This document shows, one piece after another, positions 3,096 through 41,653 of a DNA stretch of 64,000 bases. The position numbers were made by a program, and so were the translations under genes. The notes below the pieces were generated by a model. That model saw only the letters and a list, made by a program, of their open reading frames with translations, was not told the origin of the DNA and did not search any database. The stretch spans positions 248,001 through 312,000 of IMG/VR virus record IMGVR_UViG_3300005529_000001; one strand, written 5' to 3'. The first letter of the stretch is position 1; the number at the start of each line of letters is the position of its first letter.

Positions 3096-4526
3096 TCAGT
3101 CTTCAACGGTGACGATGGTCAAGCCGCCAAGCGTAGCATCTGCGGGCGATAGCACCGTTTCGCCAGTGAACTTGTTGATGCTCTTGACACGAAACAGCTT
3201 CGTCACCAGGTTCCCGTTCTTGTCATAACCCGTGACTTTCTTGAAACGTCCCGGACGGGTGCCTCGCGGCAGGACTCCGACTGCTGGATCGTCAGGGTTG
3301 ACAGAAACGTCTTCGTTTGGGTACAAACGGGTCCCGCGAGTGTTCCTCTGGTCACGCTGTCGGTTAGCCCAGTTTGGTTGCTGGTCAGAATCGCTTCCCA
3401 AGGGAAGTGTCGGGTCATCTGCACCCAAGAACGGGTTGATGGATGAGTCACCCTCGTCAAGCTCAGCCGTGTTCGTACCGATCGAAAACTCGATCGTTGG
3501 AGAAGACAGGTAGCGTTTCAACGGGACGGGAGCACCGGGAACGCCTGTCGCCAAGATGTACCCAGGCACCTTAACAACGAATTTGTACTTTATCAGCCGT
3601 TCGACTTGCGAGTAATCATCTGCGTTGTTATCAGCTGTATAAGTGTTGGCATCAACGTTGGCCAAGAACCAGTAACCCTTCGGGGTGTTCAGCTGCCATT
3701 GGTTTCCCTGTGGGAGGAACGATGCAATCAGCATCTCGATCAGCTGGTTCATGTGCTTGGTGTACTGCGTCCAAAACGTGACGTCGTATTGCGCGGTGAA
3801 AAACTGCGGTGCTGGCACCACGACTGTCTCCCAGACATTGTTCGCGCGGTTGGGGATCAGCAACCCTCCCTGTTGGATAGCGGGATCCTGTTCCAGATTG
3901 CCAACTGAACGTAACGTTGTCAGCTGTGGTGTGAAGTTCTGCACATCAGTCTCTTCACCGAATGGTGCGTCAGCTCCGAACAGGTCATCACCAAACTCAC
4001 CCGGTACGATGGTGCTAACGCTTGATGGGTACGCGTTCTGTGGGTTCACCGCCAGGTTCTGTTGGTTCGGAACGAGCAGACGGTTGACAAGCTGCTGGTA
4101 ATCACGGTCAGTGCGGTCAAGCTTACGACGGATGACGATCTCTCCCGTCTGTTGGTTGATGCCCCGACCCGTGATGTCTTCGTTCGGAGTCTGGAAGATA
4201 TTGGTCCTGATGATCGTGATTATGGGCAAGATCAGGGCGCCGTTCCTGTCTTTCAGGCCTCTCTGTCGTTTGTTGAGAGCCCACTTCTCACCAGCGGTCA
4301 TCAACACGGGCACTTTGCGAAGACCGTCTGGATCATCAGCGCCGCCCACGACAGTGAACGGAATCTCCTTGTCAAACAAGTTGAACAACGCTCGGTCCAC
4401 GTCGTCAATGCCAACGGGTGGGATGACCAAGTCACGTGACGTAGACTTCCCCTGGTATCCCGACTGTAGTGGCGGGATACCGAGGCGAACCTGAGAAGAG
4501 CTCTGCGAATTAAAGCGAGTGGGCAT
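3096..4526 (-). CDS. gp15: Tail terminator / sheath stabiliser (gp15-like)
   Basis: DDVDRALF...KVPVLMTAGEKW...KDRNGALILPIITIIRT motif; position between gp14-like gene and sheath. Confidence 0.65.
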   Translation of the reverse strand: MPTRFNSQSSSQVRLGIPPLQSGYQGKSTSRDLVIPPVGIDDVDRALFNLFDKEIPFTVVGGADDPDGLRKVPVLMTAGEKWALNKRQRGLKDRNGALILPIITIIRTNIFQTPNEDITGRGINQQTGEIVIRRKLDRTDRDYQQLVNRLLVPNQQNLAVNPQNAYPSSVSTIVPGEFGDDLFGADAPFGEETDVQNFTPQLTTLRSVGNLEQDPAIQQGGLLIPNRANNVWETVVVPAPQFFTAQYDVTFWTQYTKHMNQLIEMLIASFLPQGNQWQLNTPKGYWFLANVDANTYTADNNADDYSQVERLIKYKFVVKVPGYILATGVPGAPVPLKRYLSSPTIEFSIGTNTAELDEGDSSINPFLGADDPTLPLGSDSDQQPNWANRQRDQRNTRGTRLYPNEDVSVNPDDPAVGVLPRGTRPGRFKKVTGYDKNGNLVTKLFRVKSINKFTGETVLSPADATLGGLTIVTVED

Positions 4527-33122: not shown

Positions 33123-33425
33123 TCAGTCTACGTCAAAGGTGATTGCCAGAGGGGGTCTCTGGGCCTCCAGCTGGTTGACTTGCTCGGCGGTTGGTCTCCA
33201 GCCCTCTTTCCACTGCACGGACCTGGGCTGTGCCCAGAACAGAGCGCAACGTTCACAACAGCCCACAGCACGCCAGGAAGCCTCATCGTCACGCGTCCGC
33301 ATCAAGCACTTGCAGACTGGACACGCTAGAGGAACGGGCGGCTCAGCGTCCGTTGGGACAATGACGACAAACCCCTCAGGTTGGTCTTCGATCAGACGGT
33401 CTCGGAGGTACGGTCTCCAGGCCAT
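33123..33425 (-). CDS. Small CxxC-CxxC zinc-finger protein
   Basis: CPVC...CERC. Confidence 0.55.
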   Translation of the reverse strand: MAWRPYLRDRLIEDQPEGFVVIVPTDAEPPVPLACPVCKCLMRTRDDEASWRAVGCCERCALFWAQPRSVQWKEGWRPTAEQVNQLEAQRPPLAITFDVD

Positions 33426-36016
33426 GCTTCACTGTACACCACCCGTGCATCCTTCTCGACCTTGTTCACCTCGATGATGTGGTCAGCAACGTCCTTGACA
33501 CCCTCGACATGAGTGATAACGATGATGGTCTTGAAGTACCTCTTCAGCGACATCAACAGCCGGTTGCACTGTTCGATCGAGGCTGGGTCCATCGGGCCAA
33601 ACGCTTCGTCAATGATGAACATGTCTGTCTTGGGCAACGATGAGAGATTGATCAGGGCGACACGGAGGGCAATGGAGGCCACTGTCTTCTCCATGCCCGA
33701 GCCTAGCTCGATCGGGCGGCGGCTGTCACCGTAGTTGATGTAAACTTCCATCGCATCGCTATCGTTGTCAACCTCAAGCTCGATGTTGAAATTGACAATG
33801 CCCGTGAGGATCTTGCTGATCTCCGCATTGATGACAGGTAACTGGCTGGTGATGATTAGGTTTGGTATTCCCTTCCGTGAGAAGGCTTGAGCGATCAACT
33901 CATGCGCTTTCATCAAGCCAAGCATCTTTTCACGTTGCTCGCGGTCCTGTTCCAGCTTATCATAGTTAGACTGTTCACGACCCTTCTTTGAAGCCAAGTC
34001 AAGTCTCTCACTGTCAACCTGACGGAGACGGCGGAGTAGGTCATCTTTCCGGTGACGAAGCGCAACTGCTTCAGCGTTCTCCTCGTTCTTAAGCGCTTCC
34101 TCGAGCTCAATGAGCTTCTGGTTCGCTTCTTTCACCCGAGGATAGAGGACGCTGTTGAGCTCGAGCATCTTCTTGTCATAATCACGTTGTTCGTCTGCTA
34201 ACTTGGTCAACAGGTCACCACGCATGTTACGCAGCTGGAGCAGCTTCGTTACCCGGTTGGACAGGTCCTCGTGGCGTAGCTCCACGAGCGCGTCATCTGC
34301 TTTGTTCAGCTTCTCCAACGCTTTTTCGACACGTTCCTTCTGCGGTTCGACCTTGTCTTTGACTTTATGCGCGTCCTTAATGAATCGGCAACCTGGGAAC
34401 TGATCACCACAGGGCACATCATCCAAGATTTTAAGCGACCGTTGTTGTTGCTTCAACAGGGCAGCTTCCTTTTCATGAACAACACGTAGCTGATCGACAG
34501 CGGCCTCAAGCGTCTTATAAGCCTCAAGCCTCTTCTTCAGTTCATCAACGTCATTGTCGCGGAGCAAAGCGTCAATGGTGCTGACCTTCTGTGACTTCTG
34601 GCTCATCGAGGTCACCAGGTCACTGATCTGTTCATTGACCTTGGCACCCTGGTCACGCAGTGACTGAAGATATGACCGTTGTTTCTCGACCTCCGTCGGG
34701 GTAACCATCACTACGTCCTTAAAGGACGATTCTTCTCGGGCAACATCGGTGAGCTGGACTTGGATGTCGTGCTTCTCGTGATCCTTGATCCCGATCTGGG
34801 CATCGAGGCTCTCGAGCGTTTCTTCAAACTTCCGTTGCGCCTCGGGCCAATCACGATCGGGCAATGACTTCAAGGCGGTTTTGTTAACGTTGACGTCATC
34901 CTTGGCTAGGTCATACATCTTGTCAAAGATGTCGAGATCCAAGAATCGTGCCACGGTCTGGCGCCGTTTGGTCGAGCCTTGGTTGATGTACTGTTTGATG
35001 TCGTCCTGTGCAGCGATGCTCGTCAGCAAGGCATCCTCGCCGCTGCCAATCAGCTTCCTGATGACACGGTCAGTGTCCTTACGTTCTTCACCACCCAAGT
35101 CTTCCAGTTCACCCCCATCGACAATTTTGAAGACATTAAGGTGAGTGTTAGCGTGCTGGCGGCCCCACTTGTCTTCGTGCTTAACGGTCTGGCGTTCGAT
35201 GATGTAGTCGCTGCCGCCCGAGTTGATGATGGCTCGGGCGTAAGCGTAGTCGTGCCGCACGTTGACAACATGGAGGTTCTTGATGCTACCGCGGTCCGAC
35301 GTGTTGAACAGGACGTACAGGATGGTACCCACCACTGACGACTTGCCCTGACGGTTGGGACCGAAGATGCCGACGATGCCATTCAGAGCATCGAAGTTGA
35401 TGATGTTCCCCTCACCGTACGCGAAACAGTTGTCCCACTTCAGGTTACGAAGTGTCCACTTGGTGTTCCGAGCCACCTCGTCGTTGCCCAGGACCTTGCC
35501 CAGGTAATGGATGATCTGATCACGAACAGCTTGCCATTCTGTCTCAGTAACGTGAGAAGACGTGTGATAGTCCTTCAGCAACCGTAACAGGACGTCCGGG
35601 TTGCGCAAGTCGTCCTTTGCAAGCGTCGCGGTACCAGCGCTGATCAGCTCCCTATCGAGTTGGTGATCTGTCTTGAAAGTCACCTCACTAGCTTTCAGCT
35701 GCTCTTGCAGCTGTGACATCAGCTTGGTCACTTCTTTTTGGGCCAGGATCTCTGTCTTGCTCCTGATGCGATACCGCGTACCAGGCGGGTAGTTAGCTAC
35801 CTTCTTCAGGGTCTTCTCAACGTCACCCGCCCAATCAACAGTCACAAACGGTTTCGGATTGGGCAGTTCTTCGAACTTGACATCAAACTTGTCCCTGTTC
35901 TCGATGTCCCACAACAGGTAACCGTGAACCAATGACTCGCCATAGTTTTGCTGGACCGGACTGCCGGGGTACGCGACCCACGGCCGCTTGACGCGGATCT
36001 TGATACGCTTGCTCAA
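33392..36016 (-). CDS. sbcC: SbcC/Rad50/gp46-like ATPase carrying the C-terminal part of SbcD at its N-terminus
   Basis: N-terminal YPGS..QQNYGE..HGYLLWD (SbcD C-half); Walker A GPNRQGKSS; coiled coil; GSGME signature; FIIDE Walker B; VITH; TTG start with GAGGTG SD. Confidence 0.9.
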   Translation of the reverse strand: MSKRIKIRVKRPWVAYPGSPVQQNYGESLVHGYLLWDIENRDKFDVKFEELPNPKPFVTVDWAGDVEKTLKKVANYPPGTRYRIRSKTEILAQKEVTKLMSQLQEQLKASEVTFKTDHQLDRELISAGTATLAKDDLRNPDVLLRLLKDYHTSSHVTETEWQAVRDQIIHYLGKVLGNDEVARNTKWTLRNLKWDNCFAYGEGNIINFDALNGIVGIFGPNRQGKSSVVGTILYVLFNTSDRGSIKNLHVVNVRHDYAYARAIINSGGSDYIIERQTVKHEDKWGRQHANTHLNVFKIVDGGELEDLGGEERKDTDRVIRKLIGSGEDALLTSIAAQDDIKQYINQGSTKRRQTVARFLDLDIFDKMYDLAKDDVNVNKTALKSLPDRDWPEAQRKFEETLESLDAQIGIKDHEKHDIQVQLTDVAREESSFKDVVMVTPTEVEKQRSYLQSLRDQGAKVNEQISDLVTSMSQKSQKVSTIDALLRDNDVDELKKRLEAYKTLEAAVDQLRVVHEKEAALLKQQQRSLKILDDVPCGDQFPGCRFIKDAHKVKDKVEPQKERVEKALEKLNKADDALVELRHEDLSNRVTKLLQLRNMRGDLLTKLADEQRDYDKKMLELNSVLYPRVKEANQKLIELEEALKNEENAEAVALRHRKDDLLRRLRQVDSERLDLASKKGREQSNYDKLEQDREQREKMLGLMKAHELIAQAFSRKGIPNLIITSQLPVINAEISKILTGIVNFNIELEVDNDSDAMEVYINYGDSRRPIELGSGMEKTVASIALRVALINLSSLPKTDMFIIDEAFGPMDPASIEQCNRLLMSLKRYFKTIIVITHVEGVKDVADHIIEVNKVEKDARVVYSEAWPGDRTSETV

Positions 36017-36660
36017 GCAATCACCTCAGCTTCTGGGTATTTTGCGAGTTCGCTCTCGTCAATCTCGAGCTCAACGTCTCGACCCGCTAGGAACTGCATC
36101 TTGTGAATGTCTCCAAGCAAGACAAAGTCCCAACCACGGAAGAACTCAACCGTGATGCCCTCTTCAACCAACCAGTCACTCTCGGTTGTTGCTCCCCACA
36201 CGGGACCGTGATAACACGCGATGTTGATCTTGCCGGGTACGGGCTTTACGTTGTCCCAGTTCGGTTCATCGAACAAGCTGAAGATGCCCCAGATATATCC
36301 GGGCGAAAACTCATACGTACCACTTTCCTTGTAGACGTGAATACGTGGGTTCTTCAACGCTTTGACGATGGGCGTCACCGCATCCAAACGTGACAGGTTG
36401 ACAAGGTTACCGTCGTGGTTTCCGAGAGTAAGATGCAGTTCAGCTGTCTCTGACAACGTTTCAAGCCACCAAACCATCTGTTCGATATACTCAGGCGACA
36501 AGCCTGAGGTCTTGGTGTGAAAGATGTCGCCTCCTACAAAGACGTGGTCAACCTTCTGTTCTTTGACCTGACGTGCAAAAGCAGAAAACACCTCTCGGTA
36601 TTCGTCGTGCCTCGATAGTCCTCGCCAGTGAACGTCGGCAGTGTGAGCGATCCTCAACAT
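36013..36660 (-). CDS. sbcD: SbcD/Mre11/gp47-like metallophosphoesterase nuclease, N-terminal part
   Basis: ADVH, GGDIFH, GNHD, YHG and GDIH motifs; ends before YPGS. Confidence 0.9.
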   Translation of the reverse strand: MLRIAHTADVHWRGLSRHDEYREVFSAFARQVKEQKVDHVFVGGDIFHTKTSGLSPEYIEQMVWWLETLSETAELHLTLGNHDGNLVNLSRLDAVTPIVKALKNPRIHVYKESGTYEFSPGYIWGIFSLFDEPNWDNVKPVPGKINIACYHGPVWGATTESDWLVEEGITVEFFRGWDFVLLGDIHKMQFLAGRDVELEIDESELAKYPEAEVIA

Positions 36661-38388: not shown

Positions 38389-38787
38389 TTACTTCAACAA
38401 GCCAAGGAGCTTCAGCTCCTTCTCGGTCATTATCACCAAAGTGACACCGTGGGCTTGACACCACCCTGCAGCCGCCTTCAGCTTCTTCTGGACCCGAGCT
38501 TGGTCCAACTTCCGTTGGGGCTTGATCTCGACCAAAAGTTGTTGGCCATCTCGTAGTTGGACAAGGAAGTCAGGCCAGTATTGTCTGACTTTTCCCGTCT
38601 TTTTGTTCGAGATGTACTTGATCGACACATCTTCATACCGGTACCCCACGACGCTGTCATCAGCGTCTAGGTGTTGCATGTACGCAAACTCCCATCCCGA
38701 TCGGTAATGACACTCCTGGCCTGTCTTTGGAGACACATGGATGCCCGTGTGGTAACGCTTCTTCCGTTTTCGCTTTTTAGCTACCAT
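38389..38787 (-). CDS. gp4-like head completion nuclease (TnsA-like PD-(D/E)XK)
   Basis: YRSGWE...LD, YWPDFLV, VEIKP, K..AA. Confidence 0.8.
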   Translation of the reverse strand: MVAKKRKRKKRYHTGIHVSPKTGQECHYRSGWEFAYMQHLDADDSVVGYRYEDVSIKYISNKKTGKVRQYWPDFLVQLRDGQQLLVEIKPQRKLDQARVQKKLKAAAGWCQAHGVTLVIMTEKELKLLGLLK

Positions 38788-38794
38788 GATGTCA

Positions 38795-41653
38795 TCAAAA
38801 ATCGTGCTTAATCTTGAACATCACACGATCACCCGTCCGTTTTTGGATCGGCTGCGCTAGTGTCGTCTTCATCACCACGTTCATATCGCTGTCGTGGAAG
38901 TTGATGTTGGTAACATAAGAAAAAGTGTTTTCAGGATCGTTTGGGTAACCTGTCGGTGGTACAGCCTTGAAGGCTGGGTTGCTCGATGAGTTCAGCTGGT
39001 TGTTGGGTGCGATGGCGTCAATCTTCATCACGTGGATGTGTTGCTCACCCCGCAAGTACATGCTGTACTGGTTGGCACCATAGAAATAGAGGTGCGGGCT
39101 CTTGATGACGACCTCCCCCTCATCGTAATAGACATTACCCACGCTGTTCCACGTTGACTGGCTTGTCACGCAATCAGCGCGATAGATGTTGCCACGACCA
39201 TCATCAGCCAGGGTGATGCTGATGGGTCCTACAAAGCTGGCGGTGTTTGACAGAGCGCTAGCACCGTACAGGCTTGAAAACAACAGATCAGGGTCGGTAA
39301 ATGTCAATGTCGTGGGATTGATCCGAAACCCGTAAAACAAGTTGCTAACATCAAAGACAACAACTTCGTTTGATGATGGGTCTTGTGTCCGTTGGTAGAC
39401 CGTCAGCGGAGCACCTGCCTCGACGTCCGAACCCGAGGGCACTGTGTTGATGAAGTTGAACATGGCTGGACCCGCCTTTTGGAAGGGGGTCTCAGGTGTA
39501 GCACCGATCTGTGTGTTAGCAAAAGCGTTAACCTGAACAGAGGGTTGCGTCCCATCATCAAATGCACCTGCTCCAAAGAGCAACGTGCTAGACATCACCA
39601 TGTTATCAAGGTTGATGAAGCTAAGTTCATTAACACCCAAATCATCGACGGCGGTAACCAAGCTCTCCGATACCAACAACTGGAAACTGGGAACGAACAG
39701 CCCATCATCGCAGGGAAGGATTGTCAAGTTTCGTTTGATGACAAATGGCTGTGAATACAGGAAATCGTTACACGTTTCCGCGTTGGTTGATGTCTTGATC
39801 GCTACGCCAGTCAAATGATGAAGCAATGGGAAGTTTTCGCTAGCTAGGTCTTTGACAAAGTTCTCTAGGTTGATGTAATGACCCGCTACTCCAAATGACA
39901 ACGCAACGCTAAAGGGTTGGGTAGTTGAACCGTTGACCTCTTGGAAAGGTGTGACCAAGATACCACCGTGATCGATGACAAACTGACGGTAGGGTGCCTG
40001 GTTTGCAAAGAAGGGTGGAACATAAAGGGCATACGTGTTGTCTAGGAATGTCGGACCCACGCTGGTGCTGGTTGCGATGTCAAGGTCTGACATGTAACAC
40101 CGACGGATCGCAACGTCATGGAGCTCAGCATTCAACGGGTGATCAAATGCATAAGTTGCAGGTGTTTCAATGCCCGCAATGGGCCACATGTTGTTGAGGC
40201 CATCACGAAGGGCTGGCTGGTTTGCAAAGAACGCAGCCTGCGGGTTACTGCTGTTGTTTGGACCGTTGTAGTAGTTTCCCAAGACCAGCGTTGCAGGTTG
40301 GTCTTGGGTCACTCCCGGGATCTTTCCGTAAGAGTGTGAACCAAAGGTGACGATGTCCTGAAGAGATGGCGTGATCTGGTTTAGTGGCACCGTGAAAGTG
40401 CCAACATCTACGCCATCGACATTAAACGTTCCGACGCCGTTATTGGTGTATGTGGTCCCCCACCTGACGACAACGTGATGCCAGTGGTTTTGCCACAAGA
40501 CGTTGTCGTTAGATTGGAAAACCAAGTATGCTGATGGGTGAGCGCTAGCTGACTGGTTTCCAAACGTTCCAGACGCAATGTACCAGTCGCCTGACGATGG
40601 TTCTTGGTATAAGCTGCTGGGCGGTATGTCAGCAGATGATGATAGCTGCAATTGCAAGCGGAAACCAACAGGACGACCATTGGTGTCCTTGCTTGATCCA
40701 GTCACCAACGACAGACAGAACGTCGATGACAGGTGAAGGATGGTTCCTGCCTTGAACGTTCCGTTTGGGTTATCGGTGCTGTACCTGGGATTGATGTGGA
40801 AATCAAAACTGAACGAGCCCGACGGAGTGTAAGTGCCGCTACAGAAGCCATCGTGCCTGACCAGCAAGCCCTTTCCTCCATCGATGTTGGGATACAAAAT
40901 TGCGCTGTCGGATGGCACCACAGATGCTGTGAAGAAATTCAATGAGTTGTAGTTTGTGTAAGCCCAATGTGCGGTTGGGTAGACGCTGCGGTAGAAAGTG
41001 TTGAGTTGGTCTTTGATGACTAGCTTCCGCAGAGTGTTGCTGTTGAAATCGGGCGGGGGACTGAAGCGTTGTGGATCAAGAACTTCTTTCAATCGTGCAG
41101 CTTGCGGTTGAGCTGCGCAAGCGTTCATGTATTGTTGCATGATCGCTGGAAAGCTAGCGACCAACTGAGCGTTAGAGATCGTTCCATGGATCAACGAGAG
41201 GTATGTCCCATCTCCTGGAAGCAACGTGCTTCCCGATTTCATGTAGATGGTCCCACTCACCGTCACAGAAGTTGGGTTTGAGAGAACGAAACTCGATGGC
41301 GTCAATGCAGGATCACCCGCGGAAGGAAACTGGATCCCAACGAGCTTTCCGTTCGCAAAGGTGCAATAAAAGTTGCCATTGAACGGAACCGAGACGGAGA
41401 AATACGGGTTCCGCAGGCTCTTTGCAACAAAGGTGACCTGGCGTAACAGCGATGATAAGTCAGCATCGTCATGAGCCGACTCAACAAACGAGGAATCAGG
41501 CTGGACGTCTTTCTGGATCAGCGAGTGTCTCGGAAAGAGGTAAACGGAACCCGTTGACCCGTGGAGCGATGAGGACGTGTATGACCTGATCGGGTTAGTA
41601 ACGACGGTGAATGTTTCAACGTCTGATGGGTCTACGGCGTAGATCGATGGCAT
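38795..41653 (-). CDS. Large virion (baseplate/tail) protein with LamG-like domain
   Basis: WHHVVVRW LamG strand; VGNVYY..G; C-terminal YVTNINFHD....V.KTTLAQPIQK....FKIKHDF shared with 42529..43773. Confidence 0.6.
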   Translation of the reverse strand: MPSIYAVDPSDVETFTVVTNPIRSYTSSSLHGSTGSVYLFPRHSLIQKDVQPDSSFVESAHDDADLSSLLRQVTFVAKSLRNPYFSVSVPFNGNFYCTFANGKLVGIQFPSAGDPALTPSSFVLSNPTSVTVSGTIYMKSGSTLLPGDGTYLSLIHGTISNAQLVASFPAIMQQYMNACAAQPQAARLKEVLDPQRFSPPPDFNSNTLRKLVIKDQLNTFYRSVYPTAHWAYTNYNSLNFFTASVVPSDSAILYPNIDGGKGLLVRHDGFCSGTYTPSGSFSFDFHINPRYSTDNPNGTFKAGTILHLSSTFCLSLVTGSSKDTNGRPVGFRLQLQLSSSADIPPSSLYQEPSSGDWYIASGTFGNQSASAHPSAYLVFQSNDNVLWQNHWHHVVVRWGTTYTNNGVGTFNVDGVDVGTFTVPLNQITPSLQDIVTFGSHSYGKIPGVTQDQPATLVLGNYYNGPNNSSNPQAAFFANQPALRDGLNNMWPIAGIETPATYAFDHPLNAELHDVAIRRCYMSDLDIATSTSVGPTFLDNTYALYVPPFFANQAPYRQFVIDHGGILVTPFQEVNGSTTQPFSVALSFGVAGHYINLENFVKDLASENFPLLHHLTGVAIKTSTNAETCNDFLYSQPFVIKRNLTILPCDDGLFVPSFQLLVSESLVTAVDDLGVNELSFINLDNMVMSSTLLFGAGAFDDGTQPSVQVNAFANTQIGATPETPFQKAGPAMFNFINTVPSGSDVEAGAPLTVYQRTQDPSSNEVVVFDVSNLFYGFRINPTTLTFTDPDLLFSSLYGASALSNTASFVGPISITLADDGRGNIYRADCVTSQSTWNSVGNVYYDEGEVVIKSPHLYFYGANQYSMYLRGEQHIHVMKIDAIAPNNQLNSSSNPAFKAVPPTGYPNDPENTFSYVTNINFHDSDMNVVMKTTLAQPIQKRTGDRVMFKIKHDF

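What the first reader, a model, noticed from the sequence alone, without database searches (positions are those of the whole stretch)
35900..36130. SbcD nuclease split inside its catalytic domain, with charge-complementary tails at the break
Seen: the 215 aa ORF has all five phosphoesterase motifs (DVH, GD, GNHD, H, GDIH), then ends in an acidic, alternating strand (RDVELEIDESELAKYPEAEVIA*). The next ORF starts at TTG, overlapping the TGA and 5 nt after a GAGGTG SD. It opens with a basic alternating strand (SKRIKIRVKRPW), then YPGS and the rest of SbcD, fused to SbcC. The second frame has a TGA four codons upstream of TTG and no slippery heptamer, so re-initiation fits better than frameshifting. 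Known: GDIH and YPGS normally lie only about 10 residues apart in one chain, and T4 gp47/gp46 split between the nuclease and the ATPase instead. Inference: a natural split enzyme that re-assembles through an acidic/basic beta-strand zipper (V-E-L-E-I-D with R-I-K-I-R-V), intein-like in logic but without splicing. It could be a compact heterodimerisation tag or a way to control nuclease loading.
Basis: partly seen in the sequence, partly recalled or inferred. Interest (0 to 1): 0.8.

Follow-up and report, generated by a model that had tools for sequence, protein, structure and literature searches.

The report
Fractured phage SbcD nuclease gene
A giant soil phage really does encode its Mre11/SbcD-type DNA-end nuclease in two overlapping genes, with oppositely charged ends predicted to zip into one beta-hairpin; this is the endonuclease-free form of a "fractured gene" first noted in 2009, so it is a well-supported example of a known kind.

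Summary
On the minus strand a 215-aa ORF (36013-36660) carries all the phosphoesterase motifs and an acidic tail. An 874-aa ORF (33392-36016) starts at a TTG overlapping the TGA, opens with a basic head, and continues as the rest of SbcD fused to SbcC.

It is not an assembly error. More than 100 protein clusters of each half keep the same lengths, tail and head, and an independent assembly of the source sample is identical across the junction.

It is not a frameshift. Relatives use ATG, GTG or TTG starts at offsets from -8 to +27, in all three frames.

Most relatives are single chains of about 1045 aa with a short hairpin at this position. Four natural single chains carry the same insertion, and AlphaFold models it with high confidence as a long two-strand hairpin with a helix and a short strand at its tip. 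The split falls in a loop near that tip.

A Vsr-like (EDxHD) homing endonuclease gene sits exactly at this break in several relatives. Dassa et al. (2009) described an SbcD-like gene fractured this way, with 25- and 9-residue inserted ends. Charged tails on a split enzyme are known from phage Aeh1 NrdA.

Verdict: real, conserved, and a new member of a known kind.

The parts
36013..36660 (-). ORF1, 215 aa: the N-terminal piece of the SbcD/Mre11 nuclease, holding all metal-binding phosphoesterase motifs (DVH, GDIFH, GNHD, CYHG, GDIH).
   Evidence: Metallophos E 5.4e-12, profile 1-190 of 191; phrog_100 SbcD-like; more than 120 clusters of the same length.
36016..36078 (-). Acidic C-terminal tail of ORF1 (residues 195-215, DVELEIDESELAKYPEAEVIA). 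By homology it forms the first strand extension, a short helix and a short third strand of the hairpin insertion.
   Evidence: conserved, mean net charge -4.7. (models of single-chain relatives). (residues 178-203, 205, 208 and 210-215 are in the predicted interface).
36022..36027 (-). GAGGTG Shine-Dalgarno-like site for ORF2. It is embedded in the E-V codons of the ORF1 tail, 5 nt upstream of the TTG.
   Evidence: An SD-like GGAG/GAGG/AGGA/GGTG motif lies upstream of the ORF2 start in 14 of 20 split relatives.
36013..36016 (-). TTGA overlap: the ORF2 start TTG (36016-36014) overlaps the ORF1 stop TGA (36015-36013). This is a translational-coupling junction and the homing-endonuclease-free site.
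   Evidence: NTGA overlaps with ATG, GTG or TTG are the commonest junction in relatives, but offsets range from -8 to +27.
36026..36028 (-). TGA in the ORF2 reading frame, four codons upstream of the TTG. It closes that frame upstream.
33392..36016 (-). ORF2, 874 aa: basic head, last nuclease strand, capping domain, then the SbcC/Rad50 ATPase with its coiled coil.
   Evidence: AAA_23 above its cut-off; SMC_N and SbcC_Walker_B below; phrog_77 SbcC-like, 2.3e-50; homologues of 854-878 aa.
35984..36016 (-). Basic N-terminal head of ORF2 (residues 1-11, start codon then SKRIKIRVKR): the returning strand of the hairpin insertion.
   Evidence: conserved, mean net charge +4.9. (residues 2-21 in the predicted interface)..
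35462..35983 (-). ORF2 residues 12-185: PWVAYPGS strand, QQNYGE, and the capping domain with its linker helices (the remainder of SbcD). The C-terminal boundary is approximate.
   Evidence: The model of relative L102 matches Mre11/SbcD structures (3qg5_D E 9.5e-14, 7yzo, 7dog, 4m0v). Alignment A2.
33395..35461 (-). ORF2 residues about 186-874: SbcC/Rad50-type ABC ATPase (P-loop GPNRQGKS), a long coiled coil with an invariant P-C-G-x3-P-x-C motif near its middle, and the signature and Walker B region.
   Evidence: invariant columns G224 K225 S226, P535 C536 G537 P541 C543, D803 E804.

Best explanation
The locus is a genuine two-gene ("fractured") form of a phage Mre11/SbcD-Rad50/SbcC fusion protein.

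Ancestral state (shown). The ancestral and still commonest form in this phage family is one chain of about 1045 aa. In it, motif V (GDIH) and the YPGS strand are joined by a short beta-hairpin.

The window's lineage (shown, and modelled in relatives). The hairpin carries an insertion of about 30 residues: two lengthened strands, with a short helix and a short third strand at the tip. The gene is cut in a loop near that tip.

Expression (inferred from the junction). ORF1 is the nuclease core with an acidic strand. ORF2 is a basic strand, the last nuclease strand, the cap and the whole ATPase. They are translated as separate, coupled cistrons: the stop and start overlap, and the Shine-Dalgarno site lies inside the tail codons.

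Assembly (inferred). The two chains reassemble non-covalently into a normal nuclease domain. The acidic and basic strands pair antiparallel. Acid-base pairs would lie on one face (D195-K10, E197-R8, E199-K6, D201-R4, E202-K3) and hydrophobic pairs on the other (V196-V9, L198-I7, I200-I5).

Link to a mobile element (shown in relatives). The break is the insertion site of a free-standing Vsr-like/EDxHD homing endonuclease gene. That gene is present at exactly this point in some relatives and absent here, so the window holds the endonuclease-free allele.

Open point. I cannot resolve whether the endonuclease made the break or later colonised an existing junction.
For: Real and conserved:
- ORF1 clusters have constant length and tail. 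ORF2 clusters have constant length and head.
- An independent assembly of the source sample is identical.

Separate initiation:
- Starts are ATG, GTG or TTG at -8, -5, -1, +2, +4, +8, +19 and +27, in frames 0, 1 and 2.

Single-chain relatives:
- About 120 loci encode one chain with 14-24 residues from GDIH to YPGS.
- L079, L138, L141 and L102 are continuous and carry the insertion. Their tails match the split-clade tail profile better than all 1000 shuffles.

Structure:
- L102 model, pLDDT 91: strands 188-200 and 220-232, helix 201-206, strand 211-215. The split maps to loop 216-219.
- L138 shows the same architecture.
- The fold matches Mre11/SbcD.

Assembly:
- Complex score 0.89, 0.91 and 0.89 in three runs against a best control of 0.00. 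That mark was reached by 58 of 80 solved complexes and 2 of 110 mismatched pairs. The tail and head lie in the interface.
- Charges average -4.7 and +4.9.
- In the proposed register, 54 tail-head pairs give acid-base in 48/54 and 40/54, and hydrophobic-hydrophobic in 51/54 and 54/54. Where the tail has K, the head is never basic (7 of 7).

Homing endonuclease at the break:
- L128 and L166.
- L087, which has a main-clade long tail.
- The P0248 contigs, arranged 218 aa / endonuclease / 863 aa, and the P0246 contigs.

Prior description: PMC2677866.
Against: - No experiment shows that the two chains bind or that the tails matter. In the Aeh1 NrdA precedent the tails were not needed for heterodimer formation, only for higher assembly and activity (PMC3045599).
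- A high complex score is expected for two halves of one known domain. It may reflect likeness to solved Mre11 structures rather than real binding.
- The strand register is my inference. No coordinates or residue pairs were available. The strongest covarying pair (tail +5, head -6) is not in that register.
- The window has no homing endonuclease, and its insertion has ordinary GC content (52.6% against a gene mean of 52.6%). So the link to the endonuclease rests on relatives.
- The order of events is open. The 12 main split rows can form one clade (p-AU 0.94). Joining them with all insertion-bearing continuous forms is weakly rejected (p 0.015, a post-hoc test).
Confidence: 0.8

Rival explanations
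1. Assembly or sequencing error, or a recent pseudogene. A one-base indel near 36015 falsely splits one continuous SbcD-SbcC gene.
For: Most relatives are one continuous chain. A frame change of a single base at the junction would be the simplest artefact.
Against: More than 100 clusters of each half, down to 67% and 54% identity, end and start at the same place with conserved tail and head. Junctions differ in offset and frame. An independent assembly at depth 37 is identical. A stop four codons upstream closes the ORF2 frame.
Confidence: 0.01
2. Programmed -1 frameshifting or ribosomal bypassing joins ORF1 and ORF2 into one polypeptide. The split would then be only apparent.
For: ORF2 is in the -1 frame and overlaps ORF1. 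Phages do use recoding, for example T4 gene 60.
Against: There is no slippery heptamer in the 13-nt window between the two stops. In relatives, ORF2 lies in frames 0, +1 or -1 and up to 27 nt downstream, each with its own start codon and often an SD-like site. In some relatives a whole endonuclease gene lies between the halves.
Confidence: 0.03
3. The tails are the two halves of a very small split intein that ligates the chains by trans-splicing.
For: Fractured genes with a free-standing endonuclease usually carry split inteins (PMC2677866). Charge-complementary strands are also how split-intein halves find each other.
Against: Together the tail and head are only about 33 residues. There is no Cys, Ser or Thr nucleophile at the tail start and no His-Asn before the first residue after the head. 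Pfam finds no Hint domain. Natural single-chain relatives keep the insertion as a well-packed hairpin. [quoted passage not shown]
Confidence: 0.02
4. The split is real, but the charged tails are not the assembly device. The halves are held together by the large core interface of the nuclease and cap domains. The insertion would be conserved for another reason: a contact with DNA, with SbcC or with a second protomer, or partly for the Shine-Dalgarno site it encodes.
For: - The predicted interface includes many core residues besides the tail (chain 1 residues 1-11, 17-43, 145-161; chain 2 residues 23-55).
- The insertion exists in unsplit proteins, where no zipper is needed, and there its strands are only weakly charged (L079, L138, L141).
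- Aeh1 tails were dispensable for heterodimer formation.
- GAGGTG lies in the A-E-V codons.
Against: Strand charges are far stronger in split forms (-4.7 and +4.9) than in the continuous trio, as expected if separation selected for a stronger clasp. A-E-V is also conserved in variants with longer tails, where the start lies further downstream. The independent L128/L166 split also has an acidic end (EYEE) facing a basic start (MKKL).
Confidence: 0.25
5. Rival on origin. The hairpin insertion arose first in a continuous gene. The gene then split by ordinary mutation in its tip loop. The homing endonuclease only later adopted the junction between the two cistrons as a harmless landing site. The endonuclease did not make the break.
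For: - Continuous insertion-bearing forms exist (L079, L138, L141, L102).
- L102 may lie just outside a monophyletic split clade (p-AU 0.94 for that clade).
- Most split members have no endonuclease.
- The insertion has ordinary GC content.
- Free-standing phage endonucleases commonly sit between genes (my own knowledge).
Against: - The same endonuclease family sits at the same hairpin in a second lineage with almost no insertion (L128, L166). A close relative there, L139, is split without an endonuclease.
- L112 has a homologous tail and a split on a distant backbone (p-AU 1.7e-8 against a common clade). That fits transfer of the cassette by co-conversion during homing.
- Every endonuclease homologue I checked lies at this site.
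Confidence: 0.4

Closest known systems
SbcD-like fractured gene with a Vsr-like homing endonuclease (GOS Lake Gatun locus; Dassa et al. 2009, Nucleic Acids Res 37:2560, PMC2677866)
   Same: Two ORFs correspond to consecutive parts of an SbcD-like nuclease. There is no split intein. An inserted region lies on each side of the fracture (25 C-terminal and 9 N-terminal residues), flanked by consecutive conserved motifs. Here the tail is about 21-23 residues and the head 9-10. Relatives of the window carry a Vsr-like endonuclease gene at the break (L087, L128, L166, and the P0248 and P0246 contigs).
   Different: The window has no endonuclease gene; its two ORFs overlap by 4 nt. I could not compare sequences, because the paper's Supplementary Figure S2 is not held. 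Identity of site and family is therefore inferred from the description. The 2009 paper described one locus and gave no structure, no distribution, and no note that the downstream piece is fused to SbcC.
Aeromonas phage Aeh1 NrdA-a / NrdA-b, split by the mobE homing endonuclease (Crona et al. 2011, PMC3045599)
   Same: An essential enzyme is cut between two adjacent beta-strands near the active site by a free-standing endonuclease. Each piece has a unique tail at the break, and the two tails carry opposite charge (pI 10.4 and 3.8). There is no RNA or protein splicing, and the tails are needed for activity.
   Different: The enzyme is different. The polarity is reversed (basic C-tail, acidic N-tail). 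Aeh1 tails are AT-rich and have no homologues, whereas here the insertion has ordinary GC content, is conserved in hundreds of clusters, and occurs in unsplit proteins. In Aeh1 the tails were needed for the dimer of heterodimers, not for the heterodimer itself. Function here is untested.
Mre11/Rad50 (SbcD/SbcC) fusion proteins of Mimivirus R555 and aquatic viruses (Yoshida, Claverie and Ogata 2011, PMC3175470)
   Same: An N-terminal Mre11-like nuclease is fused to a C-terminal Rad50-like ATPase in one chain of about 1000 aa, abundant in aquatic viral metagenomes. The roughly 120 continuous relatives found here have this architecture.
   Different: In the window the fusion has been cut again, but inside the nuclease part rather than at the old Mre11|Rad50 boundary. 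I did not test whether the two sets of fusions are one family.
T4 gp47/gp46 and E. coli SbcD/SbcC (canonical two-subunit Mre11-Rad50 complexes)
   Same: The same enzymatic machinery: a Mn-dependent phosphoesterase nuclease plus an ABC ATPase with a coiled coil. The fold match to SbcD and Mre11 structures is strong. The genomic setting is among replication and recombination genes (primase, RuvC-like resolvase).
   Different: In the canonical complexes the subunit boundary lies after the capping domain and Rad50-binding helices. Here it lies between motif V and the YPGS strand, and the cap is covalently joined to the ATPase.
Naturally split inteins in fractured genes (for example gp41, NrdA and DnaE loci; PMC2677866)
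   Same: The genomic arrangement of half, endonuclease, half is the same. The halves associate through charge-complementary antiparallel strands.
   Different: There is no intein domain, no splicing residues and no ligation. The ends appear to stay as a permanent non-covalent clasp.

Membership tests
Mre11/SbcD nuclease (calcineurin-like phosphoesterase) | The five phosphoesterase motifs (DxH, GDxxH, GNHD, H, GxxH) are present in order. | tested here: met
   DVH, GDIFH, GNHD, CYHG and GDIH all lie in ORF1. Pfam Metallophos scores 47 bits against a cut-off of 21.5, covering profile positions 1-190 of 191. Motif V reads GDIH, where the Mre11/SbcD sequences I recall have GHxH; this comparison is from my own knowledge and was not tested here. 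D183 and H185 are invariant in the family.
Mre11/SbcD nuclease (calcineurin-like phosphoesterase) | Mre11-type fold: a nuclease sandwich followed by a capping domain. | tested here: met
   Tested on the natural single-chain relative L102, not on the window's own two chains. AlphaFold pLDDT is 91. Foldseek finds 3qg5_D at E 9.5e-14, plus 7yzo, 7dog and 4m0v, all at probability 1.00.
Mre11/SbcD nuclease (calcineurin-like phosphoesterase) | Mn-dependent exo- and endonuclease activity in complex with the ATPase. | not testable with these tools
   This needs expression and biochemistry.
Rad50/SbcC ABC ATPase | Walker A, signature and Walker B/D-loop motifs, separated by a long coiled coil. | tested here: met
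   GPNRQGKS and DE (D803, E804) are invariant. AAA_23 scores 33.4 bits against a cut-off of 27. SMC_N and SbcC_Walker_B match below their cut-offs. phrog_77 (SbcC-like) scores 2.3e-50.
Rad50/SbcC ABC ATPase | CxxC zinc hook at the apex of the coiled coil. | tested here: inconclusive
   There is no CxxC. Instead an invariant P-C-G-x3-P-x-C motif (C536, C543) sits near the middle of the coiled coil. It could be a variant hook. No structure was modelled.
Fractured gene / genes-in-pieces made by a free-standing homing endonuclease | Two adjacent ORFs on the same strand match consecutive parts of one protein that is continuous in relatives. | tested here: met
Fractured gene / genes-in-pieces made by a free-standing homing endonuclease | A homing endonuclease gene lies between the two halves. 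| tested here: not met
   In the window the halves overlap by 4 nt. The feature is met in relatives: L128 and L166, L087, the P0248 contigs and the P0246 contigs. I therefore file the window as the endonuclease-free allele of such a site.
Fractured gene / genes-in-pieces made by a free-standing homing endonuclease | Unique inserted tails on both sides of the fracture, absent from continuous homologues. | tested here: met
   The tail of about 21-23 aa and the head of about 10 aa are absent from about 120 continuous relatives. One caveat: four continuous relatives do carry the insertion.
Split intein (protein trans-splicing) | Hint-domain blocks, an N-terminal Cys/Ser nucleophile, and a C-terminal His-Asn followed by Cys/Ser/Thr. 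| tested here: not met
   There is no Hint match. The ends total 33 residues and lack the required residues.
Programmed ribosomal frameshift | A slippery site, and a fixed frame relation conserved among relatives. | tested here: not met
   No heptamer is present. Frames 0, 1 and 2 and offsets from -8 to +27 occur among relatives.

The most novel reading that the evidence does not exclude
The tail-stop/start-head cassette may be a portable substitute for splicing. The Vsr-like homing endonuclease would travel together with the two short, charge-complementary strand extensions. When it homes into an uninterrupted SbcD-SbcC gene, co-conversion would install the break and also the non-covalent clasp that makes the break harmless.

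This would explain three things:
- why a homologous tail and a split occur on a phylogenetically distant backbone (L112);
- why a second lineage with the same endonuclease family has a miniature acidic/basic pair (EYEE / MKKL);
- why the clasp persists after the endonuclease is lost.

If true, the roughly 33-residue hairpin would also be a natural, minimal, transferable heterodimerisation module.
Probability: 0.3. Interest if true: 0.65.

Novelty: new member of a known kind. Interest (0 to 1): 0.4.

Why it matters
This locus shows that a nuclease core can be cut one strand after its last catalytic motif and stay in use across a large, old clade of big phages. That is useful for people who engineer split enzymes.

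It extends a single-locus note from 2009 in four ways:
- hundreds of endonuclease-free and several endonuclease-bearing alleles;
- natural unsplit forms that carry the insertion;
- at least three separate splits at the same hairpin;
- a confident structural model of the ends as one extended hairpin.

Together these make a good natural test case for a general proposal: that charged tails neutralise gene fracture by homing endonucleases. So far that proposal has been tested only on Aeh1 NrdA. It is also a candidate compact heterodimerisation tag.

It does not reveal a new kind of system.

Tried and rejected
- Megablast of the two genes against 50,697 phage records found nothing. The nearest named phage protein is the continuous 1066-aa protein of Microcystis phage Mel-JY01 at 40% identity, which has a short loop.
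- An alignment mixing whole chains with separate halves (A3) misplaced the tails: MAFFT put KYPGAEV on AYPGS. I did not use it for folding.
- Mutual information between tail and head columns was not decisive. The best pair is outside the proposed register and relatedness is uncontrolled.
- GC content of the insertion shows no sign of foreign origin.
- Pattern scans of IMG/VR with the endonuclease returned only the L128 and L166 contigs again.
- Tree topologies disagreed. FastTree placed the continuous insertion-bearing trio at the root beside the long outgroup branch, while the IQ-TREE quick tree placed it deeper. The quick search also missed a better tree with the split rows together. I therefore make no claim that L102 or L030 are re-fusions.
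- I considered the idea that the tail's YPGAEV is a vestigial duplicate of the core YPGSxV. I leave it open: the similarity is about five residues, and the two segments have different secondary structure in the models.
- L020, a continuous form ending at 380 aa, proved to be a copy broken into many frames, not another clean split.

Full report
**What is there.** The finding lies on the minus strand.
- ORF1 (36013-36660, 215 aa) contains DVH, GDIFH, GNHD, CYHG and GDIH, and ends GRDVELEIDESELAKYPEAEVIA.
- ORF2 (33392-36016, 874 aa) starts at a TTG that overlaps the TGA as TTGA. GAGGTG lies 5 nt upstream. A TGA four codons upstream closes the ORF2 frame.
- ORF2 opens SKRIKIRVKRPWVAYPGS.
- Pfam places the whole Metallophos profile (positions 1-190 of 191) in ORF1. 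AAA_23 (above its cut-off), SMC_N and SbcC_Walker_B (both below) fall in ORF2.
- PHROGs names the two ORFs SbcD-like and SbcC-like.

The window is part of IMG/VR contig 3300005529_000001 (369 kb), from a soil metagenome. The neighbouring genes are a large terminase, portal, major head protein, primase and a RuvC-like resolvase. It is therefore a tailed jumbo phage. No close relative exists among 50,697 deposited phage genomes.

**Is it an artefact?** No.
- 347 proteins match ORF1. The best 120 clusters (67-90% identity) are 201-233 aa and all end in the same tail: R-D-V-E-L-x-I-D-E-x-D-L-x-K-Y-P-G-A-E-V.
- 492 proteins match the first 260 residues of ORF2. Of the best 120, 116 are 854-878 aa and begin M-S-K-K-I-K-I-R-x-K-K-P-W-I-A-Y-P-G-S.
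- Mean net charge is -4.7 for tails and +4.9 for heads.
- A Logan contig assembled independently from the source sample (247 kb, depth 37) crosses the junction with no difference.

**Frameshift or two cistrons?** I fetched 160 related loci from IMG/VR and metagenomes. About 25 are split. Their junctions use ATG, GTG or TTG at offsets -8, -5, -1 (the commonest, an NTGA overlap), +2, +4, +8, +19 and +27. ORF2 therefore lies in any of the three frames relative to ORF1. Fourteen of 20 have an SD-like motif upstream of the start. It excludes a conserved frameshift.

**What relatives look like.**
- About 120 loci encode one continuous SbcD-SbcC chain of 1037-1068 aa, with only 14-24 residues from GDIH to YPGS, for example GDIHKRQMLAYREGKPWIGFPG. 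Such Mre11/Rad50 fusions are known from Mimivirus and aquatic viruses (PMC3175470).
- Three continuous proteins (L079, L138, L141), and L102 whose contig ends after 521 aa, carry an insertion at the same place. Their tail parts match the split-clade tail profile better than all 1000 shuffles.
- In the trio the two strands are only weakly charged, with the polarity if anything reversed (RQVRLLI... / ...GMLEIDT).
- L102 has the acidic and basic strands in one chain.

**Structure.**
- AlphaFold models L102 at pLDDT 91, and 94-97 across the insertion. It shows two 13-residue strands (188-200 and 220-232), a helix (201-206) and a short strand (211-215). The window's break maps to loop 216-219.
- L138 gives the same architecture.
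- The L102 model matches Mre11/SbcD structures (3qg5_D at 9.5e-14, 7yzo, 7dog, 4m0v).
- The complex prediction for ORF1 plus ORF2 residues 1-185 scores 0.89, 0.91 and 0.89, against 0.00 for the best of three controls. That mark was reached by 58 of 80 solved complexes and 2 of 110 mismatched pairs. The interface includes ORF1 residues 178-203, 205, 208 and 210-215, and ORF2 residues 2-21.
- This score is expected for two halves of one known domain, so it shows compatibility, not binding.
- I extended the two-residue turn of the short-loop relatives to infer a register: D195-K10, V196-V9, E197-R8, L198-I7, E199-K6, I200-I5, D201-R4, E202-K3.
- Across 54 tail-head pairs, this register gives acid-base in 48/54 and 40/54 cases and hydrophobic-hydrophobic in 51/54 and 54/54. 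Where the tail has Lys at +8, the facing head residue is never basic (7 of 7).
- The strongest covarying pair is outside the register, and no coordinates were available. The register therefore remains an inference.

**The mobile-element link.**
- In L128, ORF1 ends YREYEE. A gap of about 1 kb holds a 298-aa ORF, and ORF2 then starts MKKLVPWIGFAGS.
- That ORF matches phage homing-endonuclease PHROGs and, weakly, Vsr.
- L166 has a 68% identical copy at the same place. The endonuclease stop overlaps the ORF2 start.
- L139, a relative, is split at the same point with an ATGA overlap and no endonuclease.
- L087 belongs to the window's own clade and has the long tail (...YPDAEILNTIEE). An ORF homologous to the L128 endonuclease starts 38 nt downstream (36% identity, E 6e-15).
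- A 283-aa homologue (P0248) lies between a 218-aa Metallophos ORF and an 863-aa SMC_N ORF, downstream of a primase, in eight contigs.
- P0246 lies between 199-aa and 848-aa ORFs.
- Every homologue of this endonuclease that I checked sits in this break.

Dassa et al. 2009 (PMC2677866) reported one Lake Gatun locus with exactly this arrangement. They noted that 25 C-terminal and 9 N-terminal residues next to the fracture are absent from other SbcD-like proteins. The Vsr-like family was later named EDxHD (I-Bth0305I, PMC3239194). Crona et al. 2011 (PMC3045599) showed that oppositely charged tails of the mobE-split Aeh1 NrdA are essential for activity, and predicted that such tails would be found elsewhere.

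**History.**
- With the insertion columns left out, an IQ-TREE quick tree places the split clade beside a clade of short-loop continuous forms.
- The 12 main split rows can be one clade (p-AU 0.94).
- Joining them with all continuous insertion-bearing forms is weakly rejected (p 0.015).
- Joining them with L112 is strongly rejected (p 1.7e-8). L112 is a split copy with a homologous tail, nested among marine short-loop forms next to L124.
- These groups were named after I had seen a tree, so the p-values are indicative only.

There are thus at least three separate splits at one hairpin: the main clade, L128/L166/L139, and L112. The L112 case suggests lateral movement of the cassette. I cannot decide whether the endonuclease made the break or colonised it. 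The insertion has ordinary GC content.

**Verdict.** The re-initiation reading is right, and the zipper idea is supported by models and residue patterns but remains untested. The break lies at the edge of the nuclease core, not through it. The phenomenon belongs to a described class, and the same kind of SbcD-like case is already in the literature. What is new here is the breadth of the distribution, the endonuclease-free state, the natural unsplit intermediates, the recurrence at one hairpin, and the structural model.

Noticed in passing
L128:4285-5181 and L166:2507-3388 (relatives); also L087:973-1245: A Vsr-like/EDxHD homing endonuclease gene, with two N-terminal C-x2-C...Y-C-x-[RK]-x-C repeats, is inserted exactly at the SbcD hairpin. 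In L166 it overlaps the start of the downstream half. All seven database homologues I found are close relatives, and those I checked sit at this same site.
   Followed up: yes
window 36016-36040 (-) compared with 35960-35980 (-): The tail motif L-x-K-Y-P-G-A-E-V resembles the core motif W-I-A-Y-P-G-S-x-V about 25 residues downstream. MAFFT aligned the two spontaneously. This could be a vestige of a local duplication or just chance. The two segments have different secondary structure in the models.
   Followed up: partly
L112 (metagenome contig JACKQG010009756.1), junction near locus position 4130: L112 is an independent split with a homologous but diverged tail (…KEIEESELEKYKASGWEIVSENNI) and head (MSKIKIRKKLGHIKYPGS). 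Its backbone is otherwise 60-90% identical to the continuous short-loop L124. It is a candidate for lateral transfer of the split cassette.
   Followed up: partly
window 34390-34420 (-), ORF2 residues about 533-543: An invariant P-C-G-x3-P-x-C motif sits in the middle of the SbcC coiled coil, where Rad50 has its CxxC zinc hook. It may be a variant hook.
   Followed up: no
window 38389-38787 (-): A 132-aa stand-alone TnsA-like endonuclease N-terminal domain protein (PF08722, E 2.8e-18) lies next to the RuvC-like resolvase. PHROGs labels its family 'head closure'. It is conserved at the same position in related contigs.
   Followed up: partly
window 38795-41653 (-): A 952-aa ORF has no Pfam or PHROG match. 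In a related contig, the gene at the corresponding position carries a Laminin_G_3 domain.
   Followed up: no
proteins P0194, P0202, P0210 (ORF2 homologues of 962-963 aa): Some ORF2 homologues carry about 100 extra residues beyond the end of the SMC_N match. This is an unexplained C-terminal extension.
   Followed up: partly
window 33123-33425 (-) and L105:6741-7082: A small Cys-rich ORF (about 100-113 aa, ...C-x2-C...W-x-E-G-W-R-P...) lies directly downstream of ORF2 and is conserved at that position in a 53%-identity relative. It has no family match.
   Followed up: no
L020:3445-6678: A relative whose continuous SbcD-SbcC gene stops at 380 aa, with the remainder scattered over several frames. 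It is either a decayed copy or a poor assembly.
   Followed up: partly
L030:5001-6200: A continuous relative with an intermediate loop (RESIDESGVTRKKPW). It looks like the insertion with its tip deleted, and it groups with the split L099 in one tree (SH-aLRT 88).
   Followed up: partly
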